Shown: positions 929 to 55,000, counted from the first letter of the stretch. The stretch: DNA of 64,000 nucleotides from Convolutriloba macropyga (GCF_964194025.1 NC_134481.1:32364001-32428000), one strand, 5' to 3'. Notes: generated by a model from the sequence alone, not told the origin. Numbers and translations: made by a program.

Positions 929-1727
929 ATGCTGATAGTTTTCTACTTTTCACTCAATTTTGGATTAATAATCTCGGAGTACGTTGGTTATAGTCCGCCT
1001 GATCCCAAAGCTGCAGCAGAGAGCTATAAATCGCTCTATGATGATCTTGGAGGGCAATTTGGTCAATTGGGAGAGCCGACAGATGAATATCTTGATAAAA
1101 TTTTTGTTCCCAACTTAAAGTTTAATGAAAATGCAGCATCAATTTGTGTAGTCGAGAGCTTCTTGAGTATCCGCGATGTTGAGAACATTGTAAAAATTCA
1201 ACCAATTGTTAATGAAAATAATCGAGTTATCAGAATGATGTTGATTGGATGCTCTAAGCCGTATCAAAAATCTGGCTATTGGGATTGCCTGAAAGCCGAA
1301 ACATTATGCCAAGATGATCCGCAAATCGTCTACAGCTGGGGACCTAATGCTCCTGATGTTCCAGTTCCCCCTGGCGTTGGGTTTGAAATTGGCTCTAAGT
1401 CGTTGCTGAAATACCTTGTTCTGGAAGTTGATTATGAGAGTGTTGAAAGTTCCCGCGATGGGGGATATCGACCCTCGACGTTTACCGATCAATCTGGCTT
1501 TGCATTAACCATATCCCGGAAACCAATGCATTTCAAGGCGGGCTCTTATGTGTTTATCGGAACTGGTGTATCAACTAACCAAATTGACGTTGCGTGCACT
1601 TTCTCACATGAAAATGCAATATTTCCATTTGGATTTGCAATGATTGGAGATGATTCGATTGAAACAATATCAGCATTCAGAGTTAGAAATGAGAAAGGTG
1701 TTTTGGATTGGGATCCCATTGCACGAG
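929..1727 (+). CDS. PAM: PAM-like exon 1: signal peptide and most of the PHM (copper type II monooxygenase) domain
   Basis: Hydrophobic N-terminus MLIVFYFSLNFGLII; MMLIGC..YWDC..IVYSWGPNAP..PGVGFEIG..KYLVLEVDY; donor G|GTAAAA at 1728. Confidence 0.9.
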
Positions 1728-4700
1728 GTAAAATTTTCCAGTTGCCATTATAAAATTATACCTGATGGATTAATTTGGTAAAACAATGTTTGTTAACATT
1801 TGTTATCTTGAGAGTAGAAAGAAACCAAACGACTCGATAATATTTGTTCTCATATATTGTTCCCACACCTCTCATCAACCACTAACTTTTGAAACCAAAA
1901 ATGTTTTTCCAACTTTTTTTTAAAACTGAAGATTGATAGACTTTTTAAACAAAACAAATTCGCACTGCACTCTACTACAGTTTCAAGATTTGTTGAAACA
2001 AAAGTTTACAGGGAAATAACGATTTTGCTTGATCGGAAAATTTAAAAACCGAGAATTTGTGCTATCATTCTGCTGGTAAGTTGAAGCCGAAATGATCCCC
2101 ATTTTAGTGTCATTAGAATTTGTCAACCATTTAATTTCTGGGCTGTGCTTTTAACAAAATGGGTGGAAATGGTACATTTGATTCAAGTTTGCGTGAAAAA
2201 GTTTATGAAAAGTAGCCAAAATTTTTTAGAAGTCGGCGCAAGCGGAAAAGCTACTTTTAAATTGATCTCAAACGAAGGCAGTGTTTAATTTGGTCCTGTG
2301 TTCTTTTTTATGCGATTTTTCGCTTGATTGATTTTTTGTCTGACCCATTTGACTTTTCGTCCTGGAAAAACAGGATAAACAGCTAGAGCTTGGAGGGCAT
2401 TAAGTTCTCTTAGAGCTCTATGGCTTACTATACTCTAAGAACCCGATTCACCAAATCTGTTTTGAGGAGAGAATTTCATGGCGTGAAGGGCGGTTCTTAA
2501 TTTTAAAAGTTTGACACACCCGCCATCAATGACCCCCTCAACCCTTTCTCCTTTGCAACCATATCCCCCAACGCTTGCCCCCCCCCCATTGCTAGCATCC
2601 CTAATCCCTAGCAAGCTACTACTGAAGCCAACTGCTCGCTAGTCGTTTAAGAGAAATTCGCCCGACGCTAGTCGATTACGTTTATCATCATAGAAAGTGA
2701 AACGAATAACATTACATCTGTTGGCTTTTAACGAATAACATAACATCTGTTGGCGAAACGAATAACATTACATCTGTTGGCTTTTAAGTTTTGATGAAGT
2801 TTAAGTTTCCAGATCTCGGAAACTAGTTTTTTAGCACTTATTTTTTTTAGCAAATTGGAAAATTTGAGCATAATTTCTGAATTAGTGAAAGAAAGAACGT
2901 CAATGAAACCTAAACTGCACCATAATTTGCCGCACAATAACTCGGTCCATCACAAAAACGTTAGATTCATAGCAATTTTCAATTAAAATTTCTAACAATT
3001 ACGGACAATCAAAATCAAGTCTTTTTTATTACCGGTTTGTAACTTATGAGTCAAGATGCGATGATCCGAGAATCCACAAGCCAAATGGGAGCCAAAAACT
3101 TTTGGTTTTCAATCGTGTAATATTTTTTGAAGTACTAAAGCTGGACACCGAAATTACAGAAACCAGCAACTAGGGCCATTGACACAGATAACAAGTAAAG
3201 CAATGCGGATTTAGATATGGTATACAATAAGCTCGAACCCAGTTGAATATTTCGTCACATCTGTTGGTATTTAAGTTTTGTTGAAAGGCTCATGTGGTTT
3301 TTTAAGTTTCCAGATCTCGGCAGTGCCCGAATCTAGAATGCCTGTTTTCCTATATGTCCAATGCTAGAATTTTAAAACTTGTAAAATGCGTGTTCCAAGT
3401 AGGGGTAGCTGGTTCTGCTAACGTCACTTTGAAATTCTAGCTCAGATCGGTTAATGCCAGATTTTCTTTGTGTAATCACAGTCACGTCAGTTTTGCTTGA
3501 AATCGTTCATTTTTTGCTATATGGGAAGTGGAGTCAGTAAATGTTTTGCTACAATTCCGTTGATCAAACCCATCCCTCTCAGATAGTGCCCAAGTTAATT
3601 CATTGCAGATTGGTTTTGGAATTAGATTTTTTTGAAAATTATATTTCTGTTATGTTTTAGATGTCGATATCAAATCCCCTTATTGTTCAAAAAATGTGAA
3701 CTGTTTTATTGCTCTCAAACGAAGTTTCTAGCATATATTAGTCCTGCGTTCATTTTTCTCCTGACCCTTTGTCATCAAAAATGGGAGAACTGGTAAAACC
3801 TGGAGGGCATTAAGTGGCTGAGCAGCTCTGTTAGAGGAGACGTAAATTAGTTATGTGAAGTATGACGCCTCTCAGTAACCACCCTCCACTCCCACTCACC
3901 ATCCCTTGTCCACCCTGCTCCACCTGGCGATACCCCCATCGCTGACACCGCCACTTGAGACCACCACTGCGCTCCCCAAGACTAATGCTAGCATCCTTAA
4001 GCCCCAACTGGCTACTCTCGGAGTCAACAGCTCGTCGATCTTTTGAGAGCAATTCAACAATTTATCTTTTGTTGGTAATGTTTAAAATTTATAAAATGAA
4101 GTTGAATTGGGTTATCAATTTACTTGAGCCACCAAGCAACTAAAAATCTCTTATAAAGACATTTTTTCAAAAACTGCTTGACTCTAAGTACAATTTTAAT
4201 CAACCTTGCACTTGGTCAGTAAAATGACACTGTTCTATTTGCAGATCTTAGCTCACTATTTGTTTTAATTAATGTTTTTTTAAGTTATTAGTTACCTTCT
4301 GTACAGGCCTCTTCTTTGTACTGTTGAAATTCCATAATTCGTAAGTCTTTTTTACTATCCAAATGAAATATATGATTAGAGCAGCTGAAATCTTGATGCT
4401 GTAAAGCTGTTGAATGCTTCATTTTTTGGTCTTGTGGGTCAACCTCCAGAAAAAGCAGCCTCCAAACTAATGTTCAAAGCGTGCTCAGGAAGCAATATCT
4501 GTTACAATGCAATATCGATACAATGCAAGAAAAATGTCAACCTCTTGTAAGCATTTAGTCAAACAATATTGTTAATTCTTCATTTTTATCAGCTGGGAAA
4601 TTGAATTTTGATAAGCTTAAGAATATATCAAGAATATATTAAGAATATATCAAGAATATTTTTTGATAGGATTTTTTTTCTAAATGGTTTTTCCAATCAT

Positions 4701-7700
4701 GCCAAAGTCTATCCCATGTCTAGTTTTCTTTTTAGTTAATGAAAATTCTTTGAATTGTAGGTCTGGACTTCTGCTCTGTTTTTTTTAGTTCGCTTTACTT
4801 TTTGATCACGTTGTTCGTTTTACATAAGTAACGAGTTTCACGTTTGACTTCTCACTTACCTCACTCACTGTTTCAACTGAATGGGTTTTAATTTCCTTCT
4901 TTTTTGAATTACGTAATGTAGAGAATACGATCAAAGTCAAAAGAAAAATCAAGAGAAACAGCATAAACATTTAAAGCCCAGTCATTAAGTCATAGTGCGT
5001 TAGGCTATCAATATTCATTAAAGCGATTGAACTATTATGCTTAAAAGCGTTCAGTTTAGAAGCTGAATTAAGGGTACTTTTTGAATCTAACCAAATATGA
5101 ACATTGTGACAATTAGAATAACTCGGTCAGTTTCTGTCTCTTAATTTTTCTGTTTCACTTCCAATGTGCGTCAAACGGGTCATTGGCGGCTGTTTTTCGG
5201 CTGTTTGAGGGCTATGTTTAACTTTCTGAACTTTTACTTCACAATAATAAATTTTTGTGTTTGTCTGCTTCTAAAACTTACTGACTGTATCCTGGTGACG
5301 TCAACGTTATGTTTCCATAGTTTATAAGTATTTTTATTTTCTGTCGTAGACTAAAGCACAAAAATAATTTTTGCTGTGGCTAAAATGTTATTCGGGGAAT
5401 TGAAGTCCTATTGGTTTTAATTAATCTAGTTGCTAACCTGGTTTTCAAGTATGCGGAATTAATTGGAAGTAAATATTTAGGGAACCCTGGCTGGCCGCAG
5501 GTTTTCTACCCAATGGAGCACGTGTTTAAAATTAGCAATGGAGACATGCTTGCTATCAGATGTTCCAGAAACAACTATTACAGACAAGGCAGTGGCGAAG
5601 ACGACTCGTAAGTCTTGTTTTGCGTGAATTATTGTCTTGGAACCATTTTTCTCGTCTTTGTAGGTTAGATTAATAATATTTCAATGTCAAGTCGCCTTAT
5701 TATTTGCTTTTCACGAGAGAAAATCTTAAGCTAATGCGAGGACAGATTTTTTGTTTGCCCATGCAATTAAAATTGTTCAATTTACACACCAAATATGAAC
5801 TCCAATAATTCAGTGTTACACAGCAGAAACGAGCTTTTCAATTTGTGACAGAACTCTCATCTTATTTGAGAAATGAGGAAATTAATTATTGATATCTTGC
5901 AATGTTGACCGATCACAGCGTCAGAATTTACAGCATCCATTATAGATATTCTTTCCCAACATAAGAATTCTGCAATTGAAATGATCACCAGCAATTATAG
6001 ATGTTAGCTGAGCTGGCTCAAATGAAGATTGTCAGTTTGGCGGTAGCAAGTATAGGTTTTTTCAGGGGAGGAAGCCAATCTAGCCGAATGGGCGTCTAGA
6101 AAAAGTGAGAAATTAAACCGAATATTGGTCATCTTTAAATGCACTGTTTTATACAATGTTACCTCGAAACCTGGTCGAAACGTGGTCGAAACCTCCTCGC
6201 CGACGGGTGGGGGGGGGGGGGGGGGGGTTGGCTGCGCCACGTAGAAATTGAGTGGACGACGACTGATTTAATTCGCTATTTCCTACCTTTTCTTTACTTA
6301 AAAGTTAACTAATCAGATTGTTTGGCCAATGAAATTCAAGCATTTGCTGCGAAAACTCCTATTTTCTCAATCTGCTAAAGGCCACCTTGCCCGAGTTGGT
6401 TACAATTCTAGCTGTTTTTTTAGTTAATAGGTATATTGTTAAGTGTTAAGGTTGTTTAGGGAAGAAAGTCAGTGCTCTTTGACGTTCTTGTTTTTCACAC
6501 TGGTTGAAAACAAAAACACATTCCTCCTGTGCACCCAACCAGGACACCCAAGTCTCTTTTCGTCCATCCCTTGGGACTTCAATGAGCTGGTGGCTGAGAA
6601 GACAAACATTTTGGTGGAAAACTCCTACTCGAAGGACGTCCTGAGATTTGAGAAGCTAATTCAGAGCCAGAAGGAGGAACTGCAGGGTGTCGGGCATTTG
6701 GACGAGGATGCGGGTTAGTTGTAAAATCAACTATGATAATGTTGCCGAGCTATTGAGCTTCAGGCTATCCAAAACTTTGAACTTCCACAGGAAATAACAT
6801 TAAGGCGCAAATCGTACACTTTTGTCGACTAAATTTAATGAAAAATGTCTGTGTTTTTCACTACATAGGTTTTATAGTTATAAGCGTGCGTAGAAAATAG
6901 TGATGGCAAACAAAACTAGTTCTAATTTATTTTGAAACTGGAAACATCTGTCACTATTTTCCACAATTCTGGTTTCTGAGGAAACGTAAACAATAGTAAC
7001 AAGAATTTGCTACTTTTCGACGCTCAACATCACAGTTGTCCATAGGAATATTATTCTAATTTCACGATAGTTAACAACGTTTAAGCTAGACCAACATGAA
7101 AGAAAATATAATTAATGATTTATAACAGAAAACTATCTGGAGATTAGCAGTTTTGCTAGGTTTCATATCACAGCGCATATGAACAATCAAATTCAAAATC
7201 AAGTGTCGGGCTAAGTAAAGAGTTAGCGAATTGAATGCTGAAAATTGTGGACTATGGTTACGTTTATCCGTGAATACGAATTGAATTTTTTTTTTGCATT
7301 TGTCGGGCAATAATTTTGTCAGACATTAGTTGGTTTATGTTTAGTATCAATTAAACACAGCGATTGAGAATCATACATCAGAATTCTTTTTAATAGCCGC
7401 ACAGCGATAGCTGGGGCTATTATTGGCCTTCTCTTGGTTTTTTTACGACTCGAAGAGGAGTATTGGTTTTCTCTCGGTTTTTTTTTTACAGGAAGTATAT
7501 TTGTTCACGCGGCATTTTGACCTAAAAGCGAAAGTGAGAAAATGTCTTGGTGAACAGATTTTCGCTAAGCAAGAGAAGTTTTTTGATCATGCGCTACGTT
7601 TAGTGAATGACTTTTCGACTTTGAAAAGTAGTTTTTGACTGAATTGCACATATAGATAACCGTTTTTAGCCGTTTTTTCGTCTAAGTGGCCCAATTTTTT

Positions 7701-10700
7701 TGCTTTTAATTTAGTGTCTTGTAGAAATAAATTTTTTTCGATGCTATATTGAAATGTCAACCTCGGAAATTGATGCCACAGTGTTTTGCAGAGCCGGAAA
7801 CTGCGTTTCAAATTGAAAATTGGCACTTATTTCGTGATTTTTTAGTTAAATTTTGTCTTTTTTTCTATTAATTTCTTTAGTTTTGGATCTTTTAACCGTC
7901 TTGTGGTCAAAAATCAGTTAATATGGCTGCTTCTTTTTATTAATTTATATACTTAACGCCTCTTTCTATCTCGATGTTTTTTTGCTCTATAAAATTGTAC
8001 ATATGCTAATTCGATTTTGGTAGTTTTTTTTCGATGTTTGTCAGTTTTTTGTTTGTATTTTGGTTTAAATTACTAGAAATAGTCTTTTTGTGCAACAGAA
8101 GGGACTTTAATTTTGTTTCAATAAAACTTCAGTCATTTTTTGGCGTTAAGTTTTTGAAAAACACTTCAAACTTCTTCGTAAATGCAGGCTTAAAAGTTTT
8201 TTAACCTTTTTTTTTCTGCAAAATGGTTTCTTCTTTCATATATTTAAATTCTGCTTTTTCATAATTTTTGTTCTCTTTTCTTGAGGATAGATCTTTATAT
8301 CGGATGACCCTTTATCTGTTCAACGTCTCGAATGCTGAACAATGAAATGTATTCGTTTTTCTTGATTTTTTAAATTTGATTTTTTTAACTTCAAGACTAA
8401 AATCAAGAATGTCTTTGTTTCGGTCTTACTTGCATTGCGTCATTTTTTACATTCTAGTTAGTATCATTCTAGCTTTGTCCTGGCACCTACATTCATTTTT
8501 GTTATAAAGACTTTTTTTGGTTGTTAAAAATTGAATGATTTCAGATTTTTCTTAGATTTTCGTCATTTCTTTGGTTTGCAATTGATTTCATTCAACACAA
8601 AGTAGTACTGAGAGTTTGCTAGCATGTTTTTTTCCAAAATTTCTATTTCTTACTATTTACTGCAACTTTCTTGCGGTCTTGGTAATAATTTAAACGATTT
8701 TTTGCCTTTGAATATTTTTCTGCTGGTTATGTCTTTTCTATGGTTCATTTAATTTTTTGATTTAGTATGAAATCATGTTGTCTAGCATATGTACAACAAG
8801 GAACAGGTCTGTGTTGTTTTTTCTCTTAATCGCAGTTTAGAAGTGTAATTATAGGTGTTTTCTGATTCTTAATTTGAGCTTTCTTTTTTGAAAAGATTTA
8901 ACTTTGTTACTAAGATTATCTGCCGTTTGCTTTCGCGATGTTTTTCAGATTAGAATCATATTTTATTTGAGGTCTTTTGATAACCTTGTCAGTTTTTCAG
9001 ACTATTAGGTTTTTGGCCACCCTAATTATTTTGATTTTTTATTGTTACCAAACGTTTTCAATAGTATAAAATTTTAGAGCAGACCTGGAGAGGTAGTGAG
9101 TTAATGGTTTAATACCAAAGGTAGCGGCTTCGGCTTCATTTACGGTTTTGTAAGTGAAGTTTTGACGCTTCGAGTCGCTTCCGGAATTCCTCCGGCTATG
9201 TTTTTTATTTCGTCGTCATGATTTTTGTTACGACCATATGACGTCACAGCCACTTTTGTTCATTCGTTCATGCAATTTCAACTGAATTGCATGTGTGACG
9301 TCATTTTTCGCTCCTAGTGGAGCGAGTTTCTTTGTTCATGCGCGTGATTGAATTTTTTGTCACACTTGACTTACCTCACTCTCAAAAATGACTTCCTCAA
9401 TTTGAAATTGACTCTTATTTACTTTAATTCAAAGAGATAAGGTCAAATGGGTGTGTGTCACTCTAAATGAAGGTTATTTGAGATCAGCTAATAGAGGCGG
9501 TAAAAACTTATACAGATTTTTAATCAAAATAGAACATATCAACCTTCTATGAAAAGACGATTTTTTTGGTCTGTCTTTTTTACTGTTTTTTTTTTGAGAC
9601 TGCAGATCTACGAAGCTATTGAGGCTATCTTCTGGCAATCTGCCAGCTATGTTTATTGTTGTTCAGTTTTAATGTTTCATGGCGTAATTTTTTTCTCGAT
9701 AACAGTACGGATAATCGATGCTATTTGTTGGAAATCAACGCTATCACTGCGATATTATGTTGAGCGCTTGCAGGTGTTTCATGTTTAAACATTAAAAAGG
9801 TGCAAAAAGTTTGTTTTTGTAACGGCTTTTTTGTTTGCTAATTAATGTTGCTGAAATTATTTTTCATGGTCCGCTCAAAATGTCTTCTTGATTTTTGTCC
9901 ATTCTTAGCAATATTTGAAAGGTACGGCTATATAAATCAGTATCGGTAGCTAAAAAACGTGTTTTTTTTAATTAAAAGGTATAATTAGAAGCACGTGTTG
10001 TTTACTTTTTAGGATTGCAGCTGGAAAGTAGTGACTCGTCCAAAAGTGATAACAAAATAATTTCAAATATCGAAACACCTGATGCGGATGTTGCCAAAGA
10101 CATTAAGAAGGTCATTTTCGACAATCACTGGCCTGCCAACATAGACGGCGCTTTCAACCCAGACGATTATGGAGAAATCACTGGCATTGCAACATTGAGA
10201 AATGGATCCGTGCTTTTTGTTCATCGCTCGGACAGAACGCATACTCACGAATCATTTGACGATTATAACTTCTATGTGGGTAAAAAGCGAAGTACAATCA
10301 ACGAAGACATTATTGTGATGCTCGACTCTTCAAGTGGAAAAGTGTTGAACAAATTTGGGAAAGGGCTTTTGGTTTTGCCTCATGGATTGTACGTTGACCA
10401 CGAGGATTACGTGTATGTGACAGATATCGCAAAGCATCAAGTTATTAAAGTAAGCAAGATTATCTTCTAAATTTTAACCTTATGAAAATCGTCCATGTTC
10501 AAGTTTCTAATGATTTGTTTTTGTGTTCTCTTACTTTAAAACTTTTTGCGCAACTTTTCGTTTTGTAATTCTAAAGAATCTTGTCGTTCGGGACAGTTAT
10601 CAGATGTTCAGTTTATACGTCACACGTCTAAAAGTGTCTTTGTGCATTATCTGAACCTACGTTGTGTTCACAGTTCTCATTGATAAACGTGCGACAACCG

Positions 10701-13700
10701 ATGTTGTACCTGGGAACCTCAAGGGAGCCCGGATCCGACAGTTCTCACTTCTGCCAACCTACAGATGTGGCTGTTTCTACCAAAAAAGGATACATATTTG
10801 TCGCTGATGGTTACTGCAACTCCCGAATTGTCAAGTTTGACAGAAATGGGAAGTACAAAGAAGAGTTCAAGCTCAATGACGAAGAACATACAGGCATTAA
10901 CGACAATGTGGAGGCAAGTAGTGTGACAGTTGCCGATTCTCTCTCGCTGGTCTGTGTTGCTAGTTACACACACGGGTTGGTTCACTGTTTCAATATTGAC
11001 TCTGGCGAAAGCTCTCGGGTGATTCATTCGCCAGCTGTGTTTGGAAGCCACCTGACTGCTGTTACCTATAGTGAGGCTGGAAGTTTGTTCTACGTTTTGG
11101 CTGCGCCTTCATCAGTTAATATCAAGGTCAGGGACTCATTTCAAATAATGCATGAAATTATTAGCTACTGCAGAGATATAGCGTTTATTATTGACACACG
11201 TTGACTTAAGTGACTTTTTCGCACTTCTCTTTAAGTGATCCCAGTTTTTATGCAGGTGTGAGATTAAATATCCTAACCGGCGGGAGGCGAATTGCCATCG
11301 ATTGTCTACACAAATGTTTGAAAAATTGCCCCCGGATTGGCAGATTTACATAAATTTGTTGCATTGCTTCATGATGCTGCAATTTTTCAATAAGAGCTGG
11401 ATCAATTTTAAAACCGAAATTTTGAGTTTTATGAAGATCTCGCTTTTTCAAACGTCTGGAGATTAGAATTCAGTCTTCACCCTATGATCATTCATTTAGG
11501 TAGGCAGTTCATCATGATATCTAATCCAACTACAACCACTCAAAATAGGATCATTTTCAATTGCTCTCCCATCGTGTGTTTTTTTAGAGCAAATCGTCCG
11601 ACTTTCAATCCCAATCTATTGCCGCTGTTTGAATACGCAGCCCAGTCAAAAGTTACCTAATCAATGAAGGCTTTTTGTTTTTATAGCTGTAAGCTGAGCG
11701 GAGCTATATTGCGGTGTCCTTCGTTTTTTACGACTCGAAGAGGATTATTGGTTTTTACGACTCGAAGAGGAGTATTGGTTTTCTCTCGGTCTTTTTACAA
11801 CTCGAAGAGGAGTATTGGTTTTCTCTCGGTTTTTTTTACAGGAAGTAGATTTGTTCACCCGGCATTTTGACCTAAAAGCGAAAGTGAGAAAAGCTGTCTT
11901 GGTGAACAGATTTTCGCTAAGCAAGAGAAGTTTTTTGATCATGCGCTACGTTTAGTGAATGACTTTTCGACTTTGAAAAGTAGTTTTTGACTGAATTGCA
12001 CATATAGATAACCGTTTTTAGCGTTATTTTTTTAATCTAAGTGGCCCAATTTTTTTGCTTTTAATTTGGTTTCTTGTAGAAATATTTTTTAGTTGATACT
12101 ATATTGAAATGTCAACCTCGCAAATTGATGCCACAGTGTTTTGCAGTGCCTGAAAATGCGTTTCAATTTGAAATTTGGCACATATTTCTTGATTTTAGTT
12201 TATTTTTGACTTTTTTCTTAATATCTGCATTTTTGGTGCTTTTAACCATCTTTTTTGTCAAAAATCAGTTAATGTGGCAACTTCTCGTTGATAATTCATA
12301 TACTCAAGGCCTCTTTCTGCCTCGATTTAATTCTGTTTTTGAAAATTGTACATATGCTGATCAGATTTTGGTAGTTTTTTCCGATTTTCGTCAGTTTTTT
12401 GTTTGTATTTTGGTTGTAATTGCTAGAAATAGTCTTTTTGTGCAACATGAGGGACTTTAATTTGGTTTCAATAAAAATTGAATCATTTTTTGGCGTTAAA
12501 GTTTGAAAAAACAGTTAAAACTTTTTCATAAATGCAGTCTTAACCTAAAAGTTCTTTGTCCATTTTTTGCAAAATGTTTCAATGTTTCGTATTTATGAAT
12601 TCTGCCTTTTCCCATTTTTTGTACTCTTCAGGAGGATAGATCTTTGTATCGGATGACTAGTTTTTTTTTCTATGTCTTGAATGCTGAACAATGAAATGTT
12701 TTCGTTTTTCTTGAATTTTTAAAATTGATTTTCAACGTTCAAAAATCAAGAATTTCTTTTTGTTACGGTGTTCCTTGCATTGAGCCCATATTTACATTCT
12801 AGTAAGTATCATTCTAGTTTTGTCCTGGCACCTACATTTATTTTCGGTATATTGATTTTTTTAGTTTAAAAAATGAATGATTTCAGCTTTTTCTTAGATT
12901 TTCGACATTTCTTTGGTTTGCAATTGATTTCTTTCAACATAAGGCAGTACTGAGAGTTTGATAGCAAAATTTCCACTTATGACTAATTACTACAGCTTTC
13001 TTCCGGCCTTGGTATTAATTAAAACGATTTTTTGCCTTTGAATATTCTGCTGCTTATGTCTTTTCTATGATCAATTTTATTTTTGATTTAGTATGAAATC
13101 ACGTTGTCTAGCTTATGTACAAGAAGGAACAGGTGTTGGCTGTTTTTTGTCTTAATCGCAGTGACTAAAAGTGTAATTGTAGGTGTTTTCTGATTCTTAA
13201 ATTTGAGCTTTCTTTTTTGAAAAGATTTAACTTAATTTCTAAGATTATCATCTGCCGTTTGCTTTCGCGATCCTTTTACAGATTAGAATCATGAGTTATT
13301 TGAGGGCTATTGATAACCTTGTCAGCTTTTTCAGACTATCAGGTTTTTGGCCACCTTAATTATTTTGGATTTTATAACGTTACCAAAGGTTTTCAATAAT
13401 ATAAAATTTTGCTGCATTTTATTTCTCTTGTTGACAGTGGTTTAAGTTTCACCAATTTTTAGAGCAGAGCTGGGGAGGTAGTGAGTTAATGGTTTAATAA
13501 AAAAGGTATGGGCTTCTTTTGCAATTACGGTTTTGTTATTTAAGTTCTGACGCTTCGAGTTGCTTCCGGAATTCTTCCGGCTATGTTTTTTTTTCAGGAA
13601 GTACTATTTGTTCAGGCGGCGTTTTGACCTAATAGTGAAAGCGAGTAAAATTGCCGTGTGAACTAATTTTTTCTGAGCGAGAGAAGTTTTTTGTTCATGC

Positions 13701-16700
13701 GCTGCGATCGGTGAATGACTTTTTGACTTTGAAAAGAGTTTTAAAGAGATTGGCGCATATAGATGACAGTTGTTAGCCGTTTTTTTCGTTCATTTGGCCC
13801 AATTTTTTTTGTAATTTGGTTTTTTATTGAAGCAAATTTTGATCGATACCGCATAAAAATGCAGCCATCTGAAATCGATGCCACAATATTTTTGAGAGCT
13901 TGATAACGCGTTTCAAATGCAAAATTGGTCCATTTTTCCGATTTTGTTTGTCAATTTTTGTTTTTTTTTCCATTAATTGCTTCATTTTTGGCTTTTTGAG
14001 CGGACTTTAGTTTATCAAATTAGTACATATGTCAATGTCGTTTTGATAATTCCTGAATTGGATGCCTCTTTCGGACGTGAGGTGTCTTTGTTTTTATAAA
14101 ACTGTACACATACTAACCCAATTTTGGCGGTTTTTGCCAAAGTTCTCATTTTTTTGTGTGTTTTGAGTTTATTTACCATTAAAAGATTTTTGGTTCACCA
14201 TCGTTGCTTTTGGTTTCGTTTTGTTGCCACAACTTTAAAATACAGTGAAAATTTTTACCATATTTTTAACAATTTTTTTTTGCAAATTGTTCTACTGTTT
14301 CGCAATTGCGCTCTTTTCACTTCTTACTGAGACAGGAGGATAGCTATGTAACGTTCATAAGCCTGGATTGCTTATTAACAAACAAAAGCATGTTTGCAAT
14401 TTTTTCATTTTGAGTTTTAATTAGCTTTTCCGATTTAGTTTTGATTTTTCAGAAATTGTCAATTTTTTTTCAATAGTTATCACAATGTATGTTTTCTCCC
14501 TATTCTAGCATGCTCCTTTCTACCATTCTCCTATGAATTATAATTTTATTCGTCCTGCCTGCTTTTTGTAAATTGAAAATAATTGTTTTGAACTAATAGT
14601 GTTTTAAAGTTTTTTTTTGCAATTGATTTTATTCAACATAATATGGTACTGAGGTTTTGCTACCTTTGCTTTTACAAATTTTGAACAGCTCTTTTTTGCG
14701 AATATTCTTATGGCTTGGTTTTGGTAAAATACGAATTTTTGGGTCTGAATATTGTTTTGTCTCTTTAGTCTTTTTCATGATTAATTTCGATTTGATTAAT
14801 TTTTTTGGTCATTGTTTAGTTTTATCGCGTTCATTGTGATTTAAGGCGACAAATATTGTTTACAGTTAAAGCGACAAAGTTTATTTAGTTACCAATTGAT
14901 TTCTGTTTTTTTATTATAAAATAGTGTTTCGATTGAGAGTTTACGGAAGTTGTTAAATTTTGTAACGAATTTCGGCCATTTCTTGCAGTATTCAACGTTT
15001 TCTTTTAAATTGAAATTTTGGGAGCCTAACATGGCTTGATTTCTGCTGCTCGCGTGCTTTGTTGTTTTCAATTGCTTCAAAAGAATTGGATTGTTTCATA
15101 TGCAGGAGGAATGTAATTTTTAGTTTAGTTGGTTTTATGGGCTATCTTCATTTTTGACGGATTTTTGTTGTTGTTAGTAGTCACTTTATTAGAAAACAGT
15201 TGATTTCAAAGGGAAATCTTTCATGAAGACGACTCTTCGAGTTGTTTCCGGATTTCTTCTGGCTATGTTCTTGATTTTTTTTTACCGGAAGTGCTATTTG
15301 TTCCGGCGGCGTTTTGATGTAATATTGAATGTGATTAATACTGCCATGTGAGCTAACTTTTTCTGAGCGAGAATGTTTTTTTGTTCAAGCATTGCGGTCA
15401 GTGAGAGACTTTTTGACTTCGAAAAGTTTCTGAGAGATAGGCCCACATAGATGACAGTTTTTCGCTGTGTTTTCGTCCATTTGGCCCCTTTTTTGTTTTA
15501 TTGTAACTTGGTTTTTCTGTAGAAGTAAAATTTCTCATGAATATGCAGACACCTTAAATTGTTACCACAATGTTTCGAAGAGCTTAATAATGCGTTTCAA
15601 GCGCAAAATTGGCCCATATTTCTACAATTTAATTGTCAATTTTTTGCTTTCATCGATTTCTTCATTTTTGGCTCTTTGAGCAGACTTTCTTTAACCAAAT
15701 TTCTAAATATGTGAACGTCTTTTTGATAACTCCTGAATTGGATTCTTCTTTTTGATGTGAGGTGTTTTGTTTTTATAAAACTGCACACTTACTAATCCGA
15801 TTTTGGCGGTTTTTGTCAAAGTTTTCTAAGTTTTTTGTTTGTACTTTGAGTTTATTTGCCATATAAAGTCTCTTGGTCACCATCGGTGTCTTTGTTTTCA
15901 TTTTGTTGCTAATATAATTGTTTTTGCCGATAAATGTCTAAATTCTTTGAATATTTTTAACGTATTTTGAAGATTTTTTCAATTCTTACTAAGACAGGAA
16001 GATGCCTATGCAATTTTCGTAGACCGTGATTGCTTAACAACAAAAAATCCATGTTTTTTGCACTAATTTTTTTTAGTTTGATTTTTTATTAGAGCGTCGA
16101 ATTTAGCTTTTTTGGTTTTTCAGAAATTGCGAAATACTTTTTTATTCTTTTTCACAATATACGTATTTTCCATGTTCTATTATGTTTCTTTCTGACATCA
16201 TAAGATCTATTGTTTTTATGCGCCCTGCCTTTGAAAATTGAAAATCATCGATTTCAACTAATGATAAATTGTTTTTTTTTTTGTTTTTTTTTTTAAAGTT
16301 TTTTTGTTTGCAATTGATTTTCTTTTACATACTATAGCAGTGAGGTTTTGCTAGCTTCACTTTTACAAATTTTTAAGAATACTCTTTTGCTGCAAATATT
16401 CTTAGGGCTTGGTTTTCGTAGCATACCAATTTTTTGCGTTTGATTATAGCTCAGTCTCTTTGCCTTTTTCATGATTAATTTTGATTAATTTTTTGGTCAT
16501 TGTTTAGTTTTATTGCGTCCATTGTGACTTAAAGCGACAACTAATGTTTATATTTAAAGCGACAAAGTTTGTTTAGTTATCAATTGATTACTGTTCTTAT
16601 TTTGTAAAATAGGGTTTCGGTTGAGAAAACTACCGGAAATTGATCAATTTTGTAACAATTTTAGGCCATTTCTTGCAGTATTCAAATGTTTCTTCCAAAG

Positions 16701-18409
16701 TAAAGCTTTGGGAGCCTGACAAGTTTTGCTTTTTGCCGCCCGCGTGCTTTGGTTTGAGTTGTCCACAAAACACAAAAATTTGGCTTATAGTACATAGGAG
16801 TAATGTAATTTTTTTAGTTCAGCTGGTTTTATTGGCTATCTTCAGTTTTTGACTGAATTTTTTGTTTTTAGTAGTTGTTTTAGTAGGAACCAATTGATTT
16901 AAAAGTAATTCTTTCCCGAAGACGACTCTTCGAGTTGTTTCCGGAATGCTTCGGGCTATGTTTTTTTGTTTCGTCGTCTGACGCTCTTTTTCGTTTTACA
17001 TTTGTTCACACGGCAAAGCTGAAAATGTCAAATTTTCTGATTGGCTTCTTCCTCTCACTGACGGCTTTTGCGCGTAACTTCATTTCGCACTCTCTCTCTC
17101 TATCACAAGTTTTTGCGTGATTGGATTTTGATCATACGTGACTTACCTCAATCAATTAAATGACTTTTACACTTTAAAACTTAAGTTTAATTTGAATTAA
17201 ATTAGGGTCAAAGGAACTCATCTGTGTAATAAAGGTTCCTAATGAAAGGACTTCTGCACAATGAGTTTTAACAAGCTTTATTAATTTATAGCTGATGTTT
17301 TACTTTTCGATACATTTTTCAACTTAGTTTGTGATATGAATTTAGTGGCAACCATATTGGTCGTGCTGGTCTTTTTATGTGCAATTTTTCCTGCTACCAA
17401 TTTTTGTCTGACAGATTTTTGTTGACTTTTGGGCTTGAGAAGTGGGATAAACTGGTAAATCTCGGGGTATTAAGTTTCTGTGCAGTTCTCTAAAAATGAA
17501 TTACACTAAATATGGGGTACACCGGAACTGCAGAGGAGAAAAATTGTATATTTAGTCCTCAACACCCCCCCCCCGCCTCGCCAACCCTACACCAATACCT
17601 GGATATCATCATAAGAAAGTGAAACTAACTCTGACGAAGAAAAGTTGGGGAGACCGTTTTTTAGCTGGAACATTTTTTTCTGGAAAATTCAAGAATAAGG
17701 AAAGTATTGAGCTGTGTGAGTGTGGTGAAAAAGTTGCTCTCCGATTTACTTTGCTCTCTGGTCGTTTTAGACGCAGGCATTCTCAGTGGACATCAATTCG
17801 GAACAGGCAATGCAAGCTTTCTCACCTGGGAAGGAAACAGGATTTATGTCAGTGACGTACGATATCGTTGCGTCACCAGAGAACCAATATATCTACGTTT
17901 GCGATCAAAGCCAAAACAAAATTTACAAATTCATCCAAATGGAAAAGAGTTTCCTCGCCCGTGGAGTGTCGCAAGGAACTTCTTCGAAATTAGTGGGCGA
18001 AGGCAAGGAAAGCTCATGGAAAAGTGGGGGAAAGTTTGACGAAAGTTTCTATTCCTCGCTGGCGATTTTGTTACTAATTGCTATTCCTTTGACTATTGTA
18101 GTTACAGCCACTATTGTATCAAGATCACGAGCTAAAAGTCATCCCATGGCTGATCACCGTAAGTTCGTGTCCTGGTCATCAAAGAAAGGATACGACAAGG
18201 CATCGATCCACGAGAAACGAAAGTCGAAGCAATCGGGAAGCGGTGGAGGAAGCGGAAGCAGTAACGGATTGGTCAACGGTGTTACAGGGATGTTGGGTGG
18301 AGGTGGAAAGCGAGGGTTCCACCGATTGCCAAGTGTGGACTCGGATCGTGAGGCCGATCGGCTAACGGACTCAGAGGCGGAGGAGTTTACGAGTCAGCAA
18401 GTTATGTAA
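929..18409 (+). CDS. PAM: PAM-like protein (PHM + PAL + TM + cytosolic tail), 6 coding exons: join(929..1727,5481..5607,6460..6713,10013..10449,10674..11126,17771..18409), 902 aa; predicted catalytically dead
   Basis: Exon lengths 799+127+254+437+453+639 = 2709 nt = 903 codons including TAA. All five introns are GT..AG with matching phases (1,2,1,0,0). Motifs GVGFEIG, PQVFYP, GDMLAIRC, LPHGL, HFCQPTDVAV, DGYCNSRIVKF and DIVAS are collinear with vertebrate PAM. Confidence 0.92.
2260..2677 (+). mobile_element. DINE-1/Helentron-like non-autonomous element, family A
   Basis: 5' aattgatctcaaacgaag, core ctgacccatttgacttttcgtcc..gggcattaagt, C-rich centre, 3' inverted gtttaagagaaatt then stem-loop CGACgctaGTCG. 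Confidence 0.6.
2701..2785. repeat. Tandem repeat, three copies of 27-29 bp (aacgaataacattacatctgttggc)
   Basis: Directly visible. Confidence 0.9.
3708..4054 (+). mobile_element. Family A element copy
   Basis: attgctctcaaac ... tttgagagcaatt inverted ends, same core and C-rich centre. Confidence 0.6.
4617..4660. repeat. Tandem repeat, about four copies of 11 bp (t(t/c)aagaatata)
   Basis: Directly visible. Confidence 0.85.
5481..5607 (+). CDS. PAM: PAM-like exon 2 (PHM C-terminal subdomain)
   Basis: Acceptor tttag at 5476-5480; GNPGWPQVFYPMEHVFKISNGDMLAIRC resembles rat NPQLPQAFYPVEHPVDVTFGDILAARC; donor GTAAGT at 5608. Confidence 0.9.
6460..6713 (+). CDS. PAM: PAM-like exon 3 (end of PHM and linker)
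   Basis: Acceptor tttag ending 6459; ESQCSLTFLFF..FLLCT..SLFSSIP resembles DEMCNLYIMYY..FMTCT..DMFRTIP; donor GTTAGT at 6714. Confidence 0.87.
7392..9652 (+). mobile_element. Composite Helentron-like element in PAM intron 3: host (family B) carrying a 1.76-kb family C element at 7444-9203
   Basis: 5' hairpin aatagccgcacagcgatagctggggctatt; 3' ggctatcttCTGGCAatcTGCCAGctatgtt; insert bounded by acgactcgaagag and cttcgagtcg plus CCGGAattccTCCGG. Confidence 0.62.
10013..10449 (+). CDS. PAM: PAM-like exon 4 (start of PAL NHL-repeat propeller)
   Basis: Acceptor tttttag ending 10012; LFVHRSDR, KFGKGLLVLPHGLYVD..YVTDIAKHQVIK; donor GTAAGC at 10450. Confidence 0.92.
10674..11126 (+). CDS. PAM: PAM-like exon 5 (PAL core)
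   Basis: Acceptor cacag ending 10673; EPGSDSSHFCQPTDVAV..IFVADGYCNSRIVKFDRNGKY; donor GTCAGG at 11127. Confidence 0.9.
11682..17290 (+). mobile_element. Composite Helentron-like element in PAM intron 5 containing three head-to-tail units of about 1.7 kb (about 11839-13590, 13595-15270, 15285-16965)
   Basis: Each unit starts ggaagt..tttgttc..cggc(a/g)ttttga and ends cttcgagttg.ttccgg..ggctatgtt; the first unit closely matches 7490-9203. Confidence 0.7.
11725..11830 (+). repeat. Triplicated family C 5' end (ttttac(g/a)actcgaagagga(g/t)tattggtttt)
   Basis: Three copies at about 11726, 11753 and 11793. Confidence 0.85.
17771..18409 (+). CDS. PAM: PAM-like exon 6 (last PAL blade, transmembrane helix, cytosolic tail)
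   Basis: Acceptor ttttag ending 17770; TYDIVASPENQYIYVCD..IYKF; TM SLAILLLIAIPLTIVVTATIV; tail KRGFHRLPSVDSD..SEAEEF; stop TAA 18407-18409. Confidence 0.9.
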   Translation, partial: TQAFSVDINSEQAMQAFSPGKETGFMSVTYDIVASPENQYIYVCDQSQNKIYKFIQMEKSFLARGVSQGTSSKLVGEGKESSWKSGGKFDESFYSSLAILLLIAIPLTIVVTATIVSRSRAKSHPMADHRKFVSWSSKKGYDKASIHEKRKSKQSGSGGGSGSSNGLVNGVTGMLGGGGKRGFHRLPSVDSDREADRLTDSEAEEFTSQQVM

Positions 18410-52090: not shown

Positions 52091-55000
52091 CGATGTCTGG
52101 AAAGAGCCCTAATATACATTGGAAAACGACTGACTACAAGATGTCAGGCCAATTCAGTAAGCCCGAAAATGAGCAAGCTGAATTGCTCAAAACGTTTGAC
52201 GGACATCTAGCAGATGTGAAAAGTCATTTGGCTCAGAAGAAAACAGTGTCCGCAGAAAGAGCATATCAATGGTTCTTTGAGACTTACCATGTTTTGGAGA
52301 AAACCAAACAGCAACAGAGACAACTCCTGAAGCCAATGTACTTGGAAAATTTCGATGGCGACACCAAAAGAAATTTGAGCGGATAGAAGAAGACACAAAT
52401 GGTTGGTTGAACAAATACCAAAACTTAGAAAAAGTGAAGGATATTGCTACGGCGTTCTTAACCAACGGAAAGACACTTTGCGGCTCTACACAAGGTTGGA
52501 AAACATGCGATTCAATTTATAGAGAAGCAGAGAAATTGGAAGAGGAGTTGGGATCAGATTTTTTAGACAACTCCGCAGGCAAGCTTTCAGCTGTAAACTG
52601 GAACAGCTAGTAAAGAAACTAGATTCAGATCAAGCAGCACTCAAACTAATCGTGAGATCAGATATTGCTACGGATTGGTTGACGAATTTAAGTGAGAATA
52701 AAGATGACCATAAAGGCATGCTGAAACAGTACCAGCAAACCGCAGAGAGTGGAAATCAAACATCATTGGTGTCATCCACATCGGCTGTTGACAAAGAACC
52801 AAACGAAACTGTAAATGATACAGGAATAGGAGCAATAGCAAACGCTGAAGAGATTGTCGAGTTCTCGTCCAGGCATTCTGCAACACATGGAAGCCAAAAA
52901 GAACCCAGTATTGACAGCTCACGATCACCGAGAAGACGACAGATTGACGAAATGGAGGTTGAAATCCTAAGATCTAAGAAAGAAACAGAGCAACAACTAC
53001 GAAAGCGGCAGTTTGAGTTAGAGCAGGAGCGTGAGGAAGTGGGACTACGGCAACGAGAGGAACAACAAGAACAAGAATTACGTCTAAAGTTAAAACAACA
53101 AGAAGACGAGCTACATTTGCGTCAACATAAATGAGTGCTCGAAAACGGAAGAAAGAAATCTGAAGCCAACAAAGAGCAAAGAGGCATAGAAATTGAACTA
53201 AAAATACGGAGAGACATTGTCACGGGTAGACGACATAGAATGTGTTGGATCAAGACGTTATCTAGAAAGAACTGCAGGCTGGGCAAATTCAGTGGCCCAA
53301 CAGTCTGGCCCTAAACGACCGCTATCTCCTAATGTTATGATCAACCCTCCTAAGAATGTCACACAGTACAAAGATGACAAAGCGCCCACCCAAAAACTAC
53401 CCCGTTGTTCCAGCCGGGCTCGGAACTTTTCTCAACGCAACTACAAGATTCGAGTATTCTCAAGAAACCTGAAATCCCTAAATCAATTAGGGTGACAGAA
53501 CCACAGACGCTGTTGCCCAATACAACATTCCAGCAACAAGGACGTTCAGCTTTCCAATTATATTGATGCAACGCATCGATGGAAAGCCAAAACCAAACAA
53601 TAGTGAGCCAAGCTACCCCACAAGTAATTTACCAACCGAGTGGTGACCCAAGAAGATTATCAAAACTCAAGTTAACGGAAATCTCAGGAGAGCCGCTGCA
53701 GTGGCTCGAGTGTGCAGAACTTTTCGATGTGATTGTGCATCAAAAGCGGCTAAACGATACTGAGAAGTTGCAGTTTCTGAAGAGTATCGGAGGGAGTTCT
53801 GACTTCAGCAACCATAAAACTTTCCTTTCAGGTTAAAAAAAACAGTGGCTACGACACCTACAGGATCATCGACTACTAGCAGCTAACTTGATTGTTTTCA
53901 AAGACTGGTTAGAATCCACTGCTCTCATACATGAAGACTTGTTAGTCCACACAAACCCTAAGTTCCAAAACCGTGAGAAACCAAAAACAAGTACTTTCGA
54001 ATCCAACGATGATTCTACCAAAAAAAATTCAGAATGCCCATTCAAAGATGATCATCACGTCATTTGGGTTTGTGAGACATTCAAATCAATGAAGCTGAAC
54101 GAACGACGAGATCATGTTCAGATTTCCAGACTGTGTTTCAATTGCTTGAAACCTGGCCATCAGTTGAAGGATTGCAGAAGTAGAACCGAAGCGTGCCCAA
54201 TTGCGGACGACAACACTACAAGCTTTTGCACAGCAACTTCTCAAAGAAGAAGGCTAAAACAGGCGCCTCAGGTGCTACGAAAGCAATAGCAACAAACATC
54301 GCACAAGGAGGACTCCCTGTAGTGCAGTTTAAGCTAGTGAATGGGGATCTACGCCTGAGCCTGCTGTCAATGTGTGATACAGGATCCTCAATCTCATTCG
54401 TGGGCAAGTCAATTGTATCTGCAATGCACTTGCAAGGCCGAAAAGCGTCTCTGTCAGTAGCTGGCCTCCACGGATCACAAAATGTCAAGACTGAAAAAGT
54501 TCCGATAGCGGTTTCATAACATAAGAGGTCTCGACTATTGACAACAGTGCAATTCTATGTCATTGAAGAACTGAAATAGGGTGACCAGACTGTAGATCCG
54601 TAAGTGTTGAAAGATCGCTACCCACATCCAAAGAACTTGCCAAATCAGAGCTACAATCTAAGCGAAGTTCAATGAATTTTCGGAGAAAACTGCTGCGACA
54701 TCCATCACCCATTAGAATTCCAAAACTGCACCGTAGACGGTGAAAACAAAAATAGGCCGGGCCTTAAGTGGTCCCCTGCCAACCTCAGTATCAGAGGACA
54801 GGTCAGCAAGGCAGTTGTGTAAATGGTAGGACATCGAATGCTACTCCTCAAACTGTGAGGTCACCGGTCATTCGAAAAACGAACAGAGAGCAATCAAAAC
54901 ATAGGAGCAAACAACTCGATTCACCGGTGAAAGATACGAAGTTGGACTTCGATGGCGAGAAGAGGAAGTGAAGTTACCATGTAACTCCTACTCGGCTATG

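What the first reader, a model, noticed from the sequence alone, without database searches (positions are those of the whole stretch)
929..6560. PHM domain of the PAM-like gene has lost every copper ligand but keeps its disulfide scaffold
Seen in the sequence, aligned without gaps to rat PHM by eye: VHHMLLFGC->VIRMMLIGC (H107/H108->I/R, about 1226-1252); VLQVHY->VLEVDY (H172->D, about 1418-1435); FAYRVHTHHLG->FGFAMIGDDSI (R240->A, H242->I, H244->D, about 1628-1660); DEMCNLY->ESQCSLT (M314->Q, N316->S, Y318->T, about 6464-6484); DTYFC->AASIC (Y79 lost). Established: H107/H108/H172 bind CuH, H242/H244/M314 bind CuM, and R240/N316/Y318 bind the peptidyl-Gly substrate. Eight structural cysteines (equivalents of C81, C114, C126, C131, C227, C293, C315, C334) remain and there is no stop or frameshift. 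Inference: a folded, selected, non-catalytic PHM pseudoenzyme rather than a decaying pseudogene.
Basis: partly seen in the sequence, partly recalled or inferred. Interest (0 to 1): 0.88.

Follow-up and report, generated by a model that had tools for sequence, protein, structure and literature searches.

The report
Conserved copper-less PAM pseudoenzyme of acoels
This acoel-worm gene is a full-length copy of the peptide-amidating enzyme PAM that has lost all its copper-binding and substrate-binding residues yet is kept intact by strong selection in several species, so it most likely works as a non-catalytic membrane protein.

Summary
Exons 929-1727, 5481-5607 and 6460-6713 encode a true PHM homologue; exon 1 alone matches rat PHM at E 4e-18. 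In rat numbering it has H107I, H108R, H172D, H242I, H244D, M314Q, R240A, N316S, Y318T and Y79S. Eight cysteines (four disulfides) are kept; the C47-C186 pair is lost.

The whole gene has six GT-AG exons (929-18409) and encodes 902 aa: signal peptide, PHM, PAL, TM helix and a PAM-type tail. PAL is also disabled (H690S, R706Y, H786Y).

The same substitutions occur in orthologues from at least four other sources. One is Symsagittifera roscoffensis XP_063718805.1 ("PAM B-like"). Another is an intron-free 2821-nt transcript contig.

Selection is strong. For the PHM part, dN/dS is 0.034 in the one unsaturated pair. Between window and S. roscoffensis, dN is 0.09 with synonymous sites saturated.

A predicted structure of the orthologue's domain (pLDDT 87.6) matches rat PHM at TM 0.76-0.82. 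So this is a selected pseudoenzyme, not a decaying pseudogene.

Two things were not shown: expression in the window species, and an intact paralogue in the same genome.

I found no paper describing a dead PAM. Similar dead paralogues arose independently in a separate clade that includes a Hydra protein. The scan's own notes already flagged the PAL domain and the tail of this gene.

The parts
929..1727 (+). Exon 1. Signal peptide, pro-region, PHM N-domain and the first half of the PHM C-domain. Holds I101/R102 (H107/H108), D168 (H172), A237/I239/D241 (R240/H242/H244), S71 (Y79), and C73, C108, C120, C127, C223.
   Evidence: Pfam PF01082 E 4.5e-13. Rat PHM E 4e-18. Donor GT at 1728. 68-78% identical orthologous ORFs.
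5481..5607 (+). Exon 2. PHM C-domain strands (NPGWPQVFYPMEH...AIRC) with C294 (rat C293).
   Evidence: Weak PF03712 hit on the fragment: 19.1 bits, below the cutoff of 23. Colinear with P0156 residues 269-310. AG/GT junctions.
6460..6713 (+). Exon 3. End of the PHM core (ESQCSLT = Q313/C314/S315/T317 for M314/C315/N316/Y318; C333 = C334) and the start of the linker.
   Evidence: 88% identical to P0156 residues 315-400. Alignment to rat PAM. Coordinates.
10013..10449 (+). Exon 4. Linker and first PAL blades. R465 (R533) and H517 (H585) are retained.
10674..11126 (+). Exon 5. Middle PAL blades. Y586 (Y654) is kept; S621 (H690), S636 (D705) and Y637 (R706) are replaced.
17771..18409 (+). Exon 6. 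Last PAL blade (Y720 for H786, D721 kept), stalk, TM helix (aa 783-807), PAM-type cytosolic tail ending KRGFHRLPSVDSDREADRLTDSEAEEF..., and stop at 18407-18409.
   Evidence: The tail aligns colinearly with the TM plus tail of a reptile PAM (E 6e-06) and of Saccoglossus PAM (E 3e-05).

Best explanation
The window carries a complete six-exon gene for a type I membrane protein descended from bifunctional peptidylglycine alpha-amidating monooxygenase (PAM). Its PHM domain keeps the two-domain beta-sandwich fold and four of the five disulfides. It has no residue able to hold CuH or CuM, and none of the three residues that grip the peptidyl-Gly carboxylate. Its PAL domain has lost two of three zinc ligands and the catalytic Arg. 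It therefore cannot amidate peptides.

Shown: the protein has been held nearly unchanged by purifying selection across several acoel species since one burst of change on the stem branch, and a relative transcribes and splices it.

Inferred: it works as a non-catalytic PAM. The signal peptide, TM helix and conserved PAM-type acidic tail would route it through the secretory and endocytic (possibly ciliary) membrane system as for active PAM. The luminal dead domains would then act as binding or scaffold modules. Confidence is about 0.85 that it is a selected pseudoenzyme, and about 0.35 for the trafficking-scaffold mechanism specifically.

Speculation: the fixed replacements R102/D168 and D241/Q313 may fill the former copper sites with polar contacts.
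For: - Homology and ligand mapping.
- Full open 902-aa model with canonical splice sites, colinear with XP_063718805.1.
- Identical loss pattern in P0156, P0154, P0001 and P0170.
- Selection: L001 against L004, dN 0.025, dS 0.75, omega 0.034. Window against S. roscoffensis PHM core, dN 0.09 and pS 0.83. The PHM core is as constrained as PAL (dN 0.118) and nearly as constrained as the tail (0.067).
- Spliced transcript contig L004 (2706-nt uninterrupted ORF, while the over-90%-identical genomic locus L001 has an intron after exon 1).
- Fold: pLDDT 87.6, pTM 0.85, best PDB matches all rat PHM at TM 0.76-0.82.
- Tree: stem of 2.29 substitutions per site, crown branches of at most 0.23.
- PAL residues.
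- Tail homology.
Against: - No RNA run was listed for the window species, and the four runs found are genomic DNA with even depth over the introns.
- The structure was predicted for the orthologue, not the window protein, and from an alignment made mostly of active PHMs.
- The non-catalytic role is inferred only from architecture and conservation.
- The former active-site replacements are invariant at 8 of 10 positions, which is not clearly above the background of 61-69% invariant columns. This gives no specific evidence for a new site there.
- I could not search the genome for the active PHM and PAL that the model assumes exist.
Confidence: 0.82

Rival explanations
1. A decaying pseudogene. 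This would be a recently inactivated PAM copy whose open frame survives by chance.
For: All catalytic residues of both domains are gone. No RNA evidence exists in the window species.
Against: A 902-codon frame is open over six exons here. Full-length open frames also exist in S. roscoffensis and in a transcript contig, and the orthologous exon-1 frames are open at two further loci, all at saturated synonymous divergence. Omega is 0.034. A spliced transcript exists in a relative.
Confidence: 0.03
2. Still an oxidoreductase or metal enzyme with a rebuilt site. The new Asp, Gln and Arg residues would bind another metal or cofactor and catalyse a different reaction.
For: The replacement residues R102, D168, I239, D241 and Q313 are fixed in all orthologues. 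An unrelated dead clade (P0047) shows R, I and D at the same three positions.
Against: No His, Met or Cys is gained at either site. The substrate-binding R240, N316 and Y318 are lost too. Invariance there is not above background. PAL, the partner step, is also dead.
Confidence: 0.07
3. A luminal decoy or regulator of the active amidating enzymes. For example, it might pair with or sequester active PHM or PAL, or their peptide substrates, rather than act in trafficking.
For: The PHM core is as constrained as the tail, so the luminal part matters by itself. Unchecked scan notes report other PAM-like loci in this genome.
Against: The canonical peptide-carboxylate contacts are gone. No partner has been identified.
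Confidence: 0.2

Closest known systems
Rat and vertebrate bifunctional PAM (PHM catalytic core, e.g. PDB 1PHM/1OPM/5WM0; PAL, PDB 3FVZ)
   Same: Same domain order: signal, PHM, linker, PAL, TM, acidic cytosolic tail. The PHM fold is the same (TM 0.76-0.82 for the orthologue model). Four of five PHM disulfides are kept. The PAL six-blade NHL propeller matches at E 2.5e-48 for the orthologue. The GF-R-L...DSD...SE-EE tail motif is present.
   Different: All six copper ligands, the three substrate contacts and Y79 are replaced. The C47-C186 disulfide is lost. PAL has H690S, D705S, R706Y and H786Y.
Symsagittifera roscoffensis XP_063718805.1, 'peptidyl-glycine alpha-amidating monooxygenase B-like' (RefSeq automatic name)
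   Same: It is the orthologue: 82% identical overall and 86% in the PHM core, with the same substitutions and the same architecture.
   Different: Seven exons in 7.7 kb against six exons in 17.5 kb here. H786 is retained there and is Y here. The database name implies an active enzyme, which the residues do not support.
Hydra vulgaris PAM isoforms (XP_065672639.1) and unnamed relatives P0047 and P0038
   Same: They are PAM-architecture proteins of about 817-834 aa with copper ligands replaced (DHHYFV, ERLIDR, QRYEHI). The Hydra protein also lacks the PAL ligands.
   Different: They form a separate, well-supported clade (SH-aLRT 96) away from the acoel clade, so the loss is independent. Hydra keeps the CuH pair H108/H172. 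P0047 and P0038 keep the PAL zinc histidines.

Membership tests
Copper type II ascorbate-dependent monooxygenase fold family (PHM/DBH; Pfam PF01082 + PF03712) | Significant sequence similarity to the N- and C-terminal monooxygenase domains | tested here: met
   PF01082 scores 49.9 bits against a cutoff of 30. Rat PHM matches at E 4e-18, and at 5.6e-36 for the orthologue's whole PHM part. PF03712 is only weak on the fragments.
Copper type II ascorbate-dependent monooxygenase fold family (PHM/DBH; Pfam PF01082 + PF03712) | Two-domain beta-sandwich fold | tested here: met
   The AlphaFold2 model of the orthologue P0156:40-362 has pLDDT 87.6. Its top 29 PDB matches are rat PHM (TM 0.70-0.82), followed by human DBH. 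The window protein itself was not modelled.
Active PHM enzyme | CuH site: H107, H108, H172 | tested here: not met
   I101, R102 and D168.
Active PHM enzyme | CuM site: H242, H244, M314 | tested here: not met
   I239, D241 and Q313.
Active PHM enzyme | Peptidyl-Gly binding residues R240, N316, Y318 | tested here: not met
   A237, S315 and T317.
Active PHM enzyme | Hydroxylase activity and copper content | not testable with these tools
   Needs recombinant protein.
Bifunctional membrane PAM (architecture) | Signal peptide, PHM, PAL, TM helix and acidic cytosolic tail in one polypeptide | tested here: met
   902-aa model. PAL matches 3FVZ at E 2.5e-48 for the orthologue. TM helix at aa 783-807. 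The tail aligns to vertebrate and hemichordate PAM tails.
Active PAL enzyme | Zn ligands H585, H690, H786 and catalytic Y654, R706 | tested here: not met
   The window has H, S, Y and Y, Y at these positions. P0170 has Q, Q, Y and F, Y.
Pseudoenzyme (selected, catalytically dead homologue) | Purifying selection on the dead domain | tested here: met
   Omega 0.034 for L001 against L004. Window against S. roscoffensis gives dN 0.09 with saturated pS of 0.83.
Pseudoenzyme (selected, catalytically dead homologue) | Expressed as a correctly spliced mRNA | tested here: inconclusive
   Met in a relative: L004 is an intron-free 2821-nt contig from SRR19327882. No RNA run was listed for the window species.

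The most novel reading that the evidence does not exclude
Acoels keep the ancestral membrane PAM only for a catalysis-independent job, such as building cilia or secretory granules, or signalling through its tail. Amidation would then be done by other, separate PHM and PAL genes. That would make this gene a natural separation-of-function allele, showing that the PAM scaffold has an essential non-enzymatic role.
Probability: 0.3. Interest if true: 0.8.

Novelty: new variant of a known kind. Interest (0 to 1): 0.62.

Why it matters
PAM is regarded as the only enzyme that amidates peptides, and it is also needed for cilium and microvillus formation. Whether those cell-biological roles need catalysis is debated in the review PMC6529398.

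This protein has the full PAM architecture and a conserved trafficking tail. Both its active sites were erased and it was then held under strong selection. It is therefore a natural test case: knocking it down in an acoel would show what PAM protein does without its chemistry.

It also warns that database names such as "PAM B-like" should not be read as evidence of amidating capacity. Dead PAM paralogues have arisen more than once: in acoels and in a separate clade that includes a Hydra protein.

Tried and rejected
- RNA evidence in the window species.
- A whole-protein word-index search with P0156 returned nothing. The orthologues' clusters are represented by short exon ORFs outside the length filter.
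- The PAL-region search returned only vertebrate PAMs at 35-37% identity in its top 120. No acoel paralogue could be named.
- An intact PHM or PAL paralogue in this genome could not be looked for, because no tool searches this genome. Only unchecked scan notes mention other PAM-like loci.
- Exon 3 of the L001 relative was not found within the 10-kb flank.
- Library dN/dS routines failed on saturated pairs, so I wrote Nei-Gojobori counts.
- Six literature searches for a catalytically dead PAM or PHM found nothing relevant. Attenborough et al. 2012 is not held.
- I considered whether P0047 (ERLIDR pattern) is a distant orthologue. I rejected this because it groups with the clade containing the Hydra protein.
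- I did not model the window's own spliced protein, because it has no single reference.

Full report
**What is there.** The window is AT-rich eukaryotic DNA. On the + strand, exon 1 (929-1727) opens with ATG and a hydrophobic signal sequence and ends at a GT donor. Using the named orthologue as a guide, tblastn found six colinear blocks. I fixed the splice sites by eye on the sequence. The model is 929-1727, 5481-5607, 6460-6713, 10013-10449, 10674-11126 and 17771-18409. Every intron is GT-AG. The product is 902 aa with no stop or frameshift.

**Check of the observation.** Exon 1 hits Pfam Cu2_monooxygen at 49.9 bits against a cutoff of 30. It matches rat PHM structures at E 4e-18. The orthologue's PHM part aligns to rat PAM 5wm0_A at E 5.6e-36, and that chain's index equals rat PAM numbering. 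Read off those alignments, and off an hmmsearch alignment of 176 PHM domains, the window protein has:
- S71 for Y79, I101/R102 for H107/H108, D168 for H172
- A237 for R240, I239/D241 for H242/H244
- Q313 for M314, S315 for N316, T317 for Y318

The cysteines equivalent to C81, C114, C126, C131, C227, C293, C315 and C334 are all present. C186 is Gln, so the fifth rat disulfide is lost.

Of 47 columns at least 85% conserved in 89 other PHM domains (4 are domain-end artefacts), the acoel proteins keep 25. These are mainly Cys, Gly, Trp and Pro. Nearly all the changed ones belong to the ligand and substrate motifs.

**Relatives.** An exhaustive profile-free search found one close cluster, P0001 at 68% identity. 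The next hits drop to about 30% identity. The word-index search added P0153 (78%), P0154 (75%, from GCA_013332895.1) and the window's own ORFs. Cluster look-ups then showed two things:
- P0153 belongs with XP_063718805.1, "peptidyl-glycine alpha-amidating monooxygenase B-like" of the acoel Symsagittifera roscoffensis (904 aa).
- P0001 belongs with P0170, a 901-aa product of a 2821-nt Logan contig.

That contig, L004 from SRR19327882, carries an uninterrupted 2706-nt ORF. The over-90%-identical genomic locus L001 has an intron after exon 1. L004 is therefore a spliced transcript. All these proteins show I/M-R-D-I-D-Q at the six ligand positions. Another agent's note names the window genome as Convolutriloba macropyga. 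I confirmed only that the closest named relative is an acoel.

**Selection.** Nei-Gojobori counts on codon alignments give, for the PHM part:
- L001 against L004: dN 0.025, dS 0.75, omega 0.034.
- Window against S. roscoffensis, PHM core: dN 0.09 with pS 0.83 (saturated).
- All other pairs: pN/pS of 0.10-0.25 at saturation.

The PHM core (dN 0.09) is as constrained as PAL (0.118) and close to the TM plus tail (0.067). A maximum-likelihood tree of 96 PHM domains puts the acoel clade on a stem of 2.29 substitutions per site, with crown branches of 0.23 or less. This looks like one episode of remodelling followed by stasis. A decaying pseudogene is excluded.

**Fold.** AlphaFold2 on the orthologue's residues 40-362, with a 30-row alignment, gave pLDDT 87.6 and pTM 0.85. 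Foldseek against the PDB returned 29 rat PHM entries first (TM 0.70-0.82, E down to 1.7e-26), then human DBH. Two caveats apply. The model is of the orthologue, which is about 84-86% identical to the window's PHM core. The alignment also consists mostly of active PHMs.

**Rest of the gene.** The PAL part matches rat PAL 3FVZ at E 2.5e-48. In the window it has S for H690, S for D705, Y for R706 and Y for H786. It keeps R533, H585, Y654 and D787. The orthologue P0170 has further lost H585 and Y654. This agrees with the scan note s1-214622. The TM helix and tail align colinearly with reptile and Saccoglossus PAM tails, including the GF-R-L...DSD...SE-EE motif. This agrees with note s1-214717.

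**How it most likely works.** Shown: it is a homologue of PAM, it lacks every catalytic residue tested, it is under strong purifying selection, and it is transcribed and spliced in a relative. Inferred: it is a non-catalytic membrane protein that follows the PAM trafficking route through its conserved tail and uses its dead luminal domains as binding or scaffold modules. The canonical peptide contacts are gone, so a simple peptidyl-Gly receptor is unlikely. The fixed R102/D168 and D241/Q313 may replace the coppers structurally. However, their invariance (8 of 10 former active-site positions) is not above the background of 61-69%.

**Comparison and novelty.** Other PAM-architecture proteins have also lost ligands:
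- Hydra vulgaris XP_065672639.1: CuM ligands and PAL ligands lost.
- P0047 and P0038: PHM dead.
- P0061 and P0103: PAL dead.

The three PHM-dead ones form a separate, supported clade together with P0061, so dead PAM paralogues arose at least twice. Six literature searches found no description of a catalytically dead PAM. The 2019 review of PAM's ciliary and cytoskeletal roles contains neither "inactive" nor "non-catalytic" and its matched passages mention none. The gene is thus predicted in a sister species under a misleading enzyme name, and I found no published reading of it as a pseudoenzyme.

**Limits.**
- No RNA run was listed for the window species. The four runs found are genomic, with even depth across introns.
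- I could not search this genome for intact PHM or PAL. Two unchecked scan notes report other PAM-like loci.
- The PAL-region search listed only vertebrate PAMs among its top 120 hits.

Noticed in passing
window 2129-2528, 3529-3928, 4529-5128 (intron 1): Very high-copy repeats. Summed contig depth in the DNA runs rises from about 35 to between 3e4 and 1.8e5, with many repeat-type joints. This suggests thousands of copies of short interspersed elements in this genome.
   Followed up: no
window 6200-6232 (intron 2): A run of about 25 G. Contigs of all four DNA runs break or fray here, with loose ends at 6209-6228.
   Followed up: no
window 53888-54289 and 56833-57516: Short ORFs with a gag-type zinc knuckle and an integrase (H2C2 plus rve core) in the GC-richer stretch at 52-58 kb. 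These are pieces of a broken LTR retroelement.
   Followed up: partly
P0082 (Hydra vulgaris XP_065672639.1), P0047, P0038, P0061, P0103: PAM-architecture proteins outside the acoels also lack catalytic residues. Hydra has DHHYFV at the copper sites and no PAL ligands. P0047 (ERLIDR) shares R108, I242 and D244 with the acoel protein although it sits in a different clade. P0061 and P0103 have dead PAL only.
   Followed up: partly
L003:10001-17717 (S. roscoffensis orthologue): The orthologue has seven exons in 7.7 kb, with the window's exon 5 split by an extra intron. The window gene spreads six exons over 17.5 kb because its introns are repeat-filled.
   Followed up: partly
window 10381, 10812, 17858 and orthologues: The former PAL active site drifts between orthologues. 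H585 and Y654 are kept here but are Q and F in P0170. H786 is kept in S. roscoffensis but is Y here. The dead PHM site, by contrast, is fixed.
   Followed up: yes
window 5407-5465 and 6708-6790: Clusters of linked single-base differences appear in runs X1 and X2 at about one third of the depth and are absent from X3. This looks like a second haplotype in intronic DNA.
   Followed up: no
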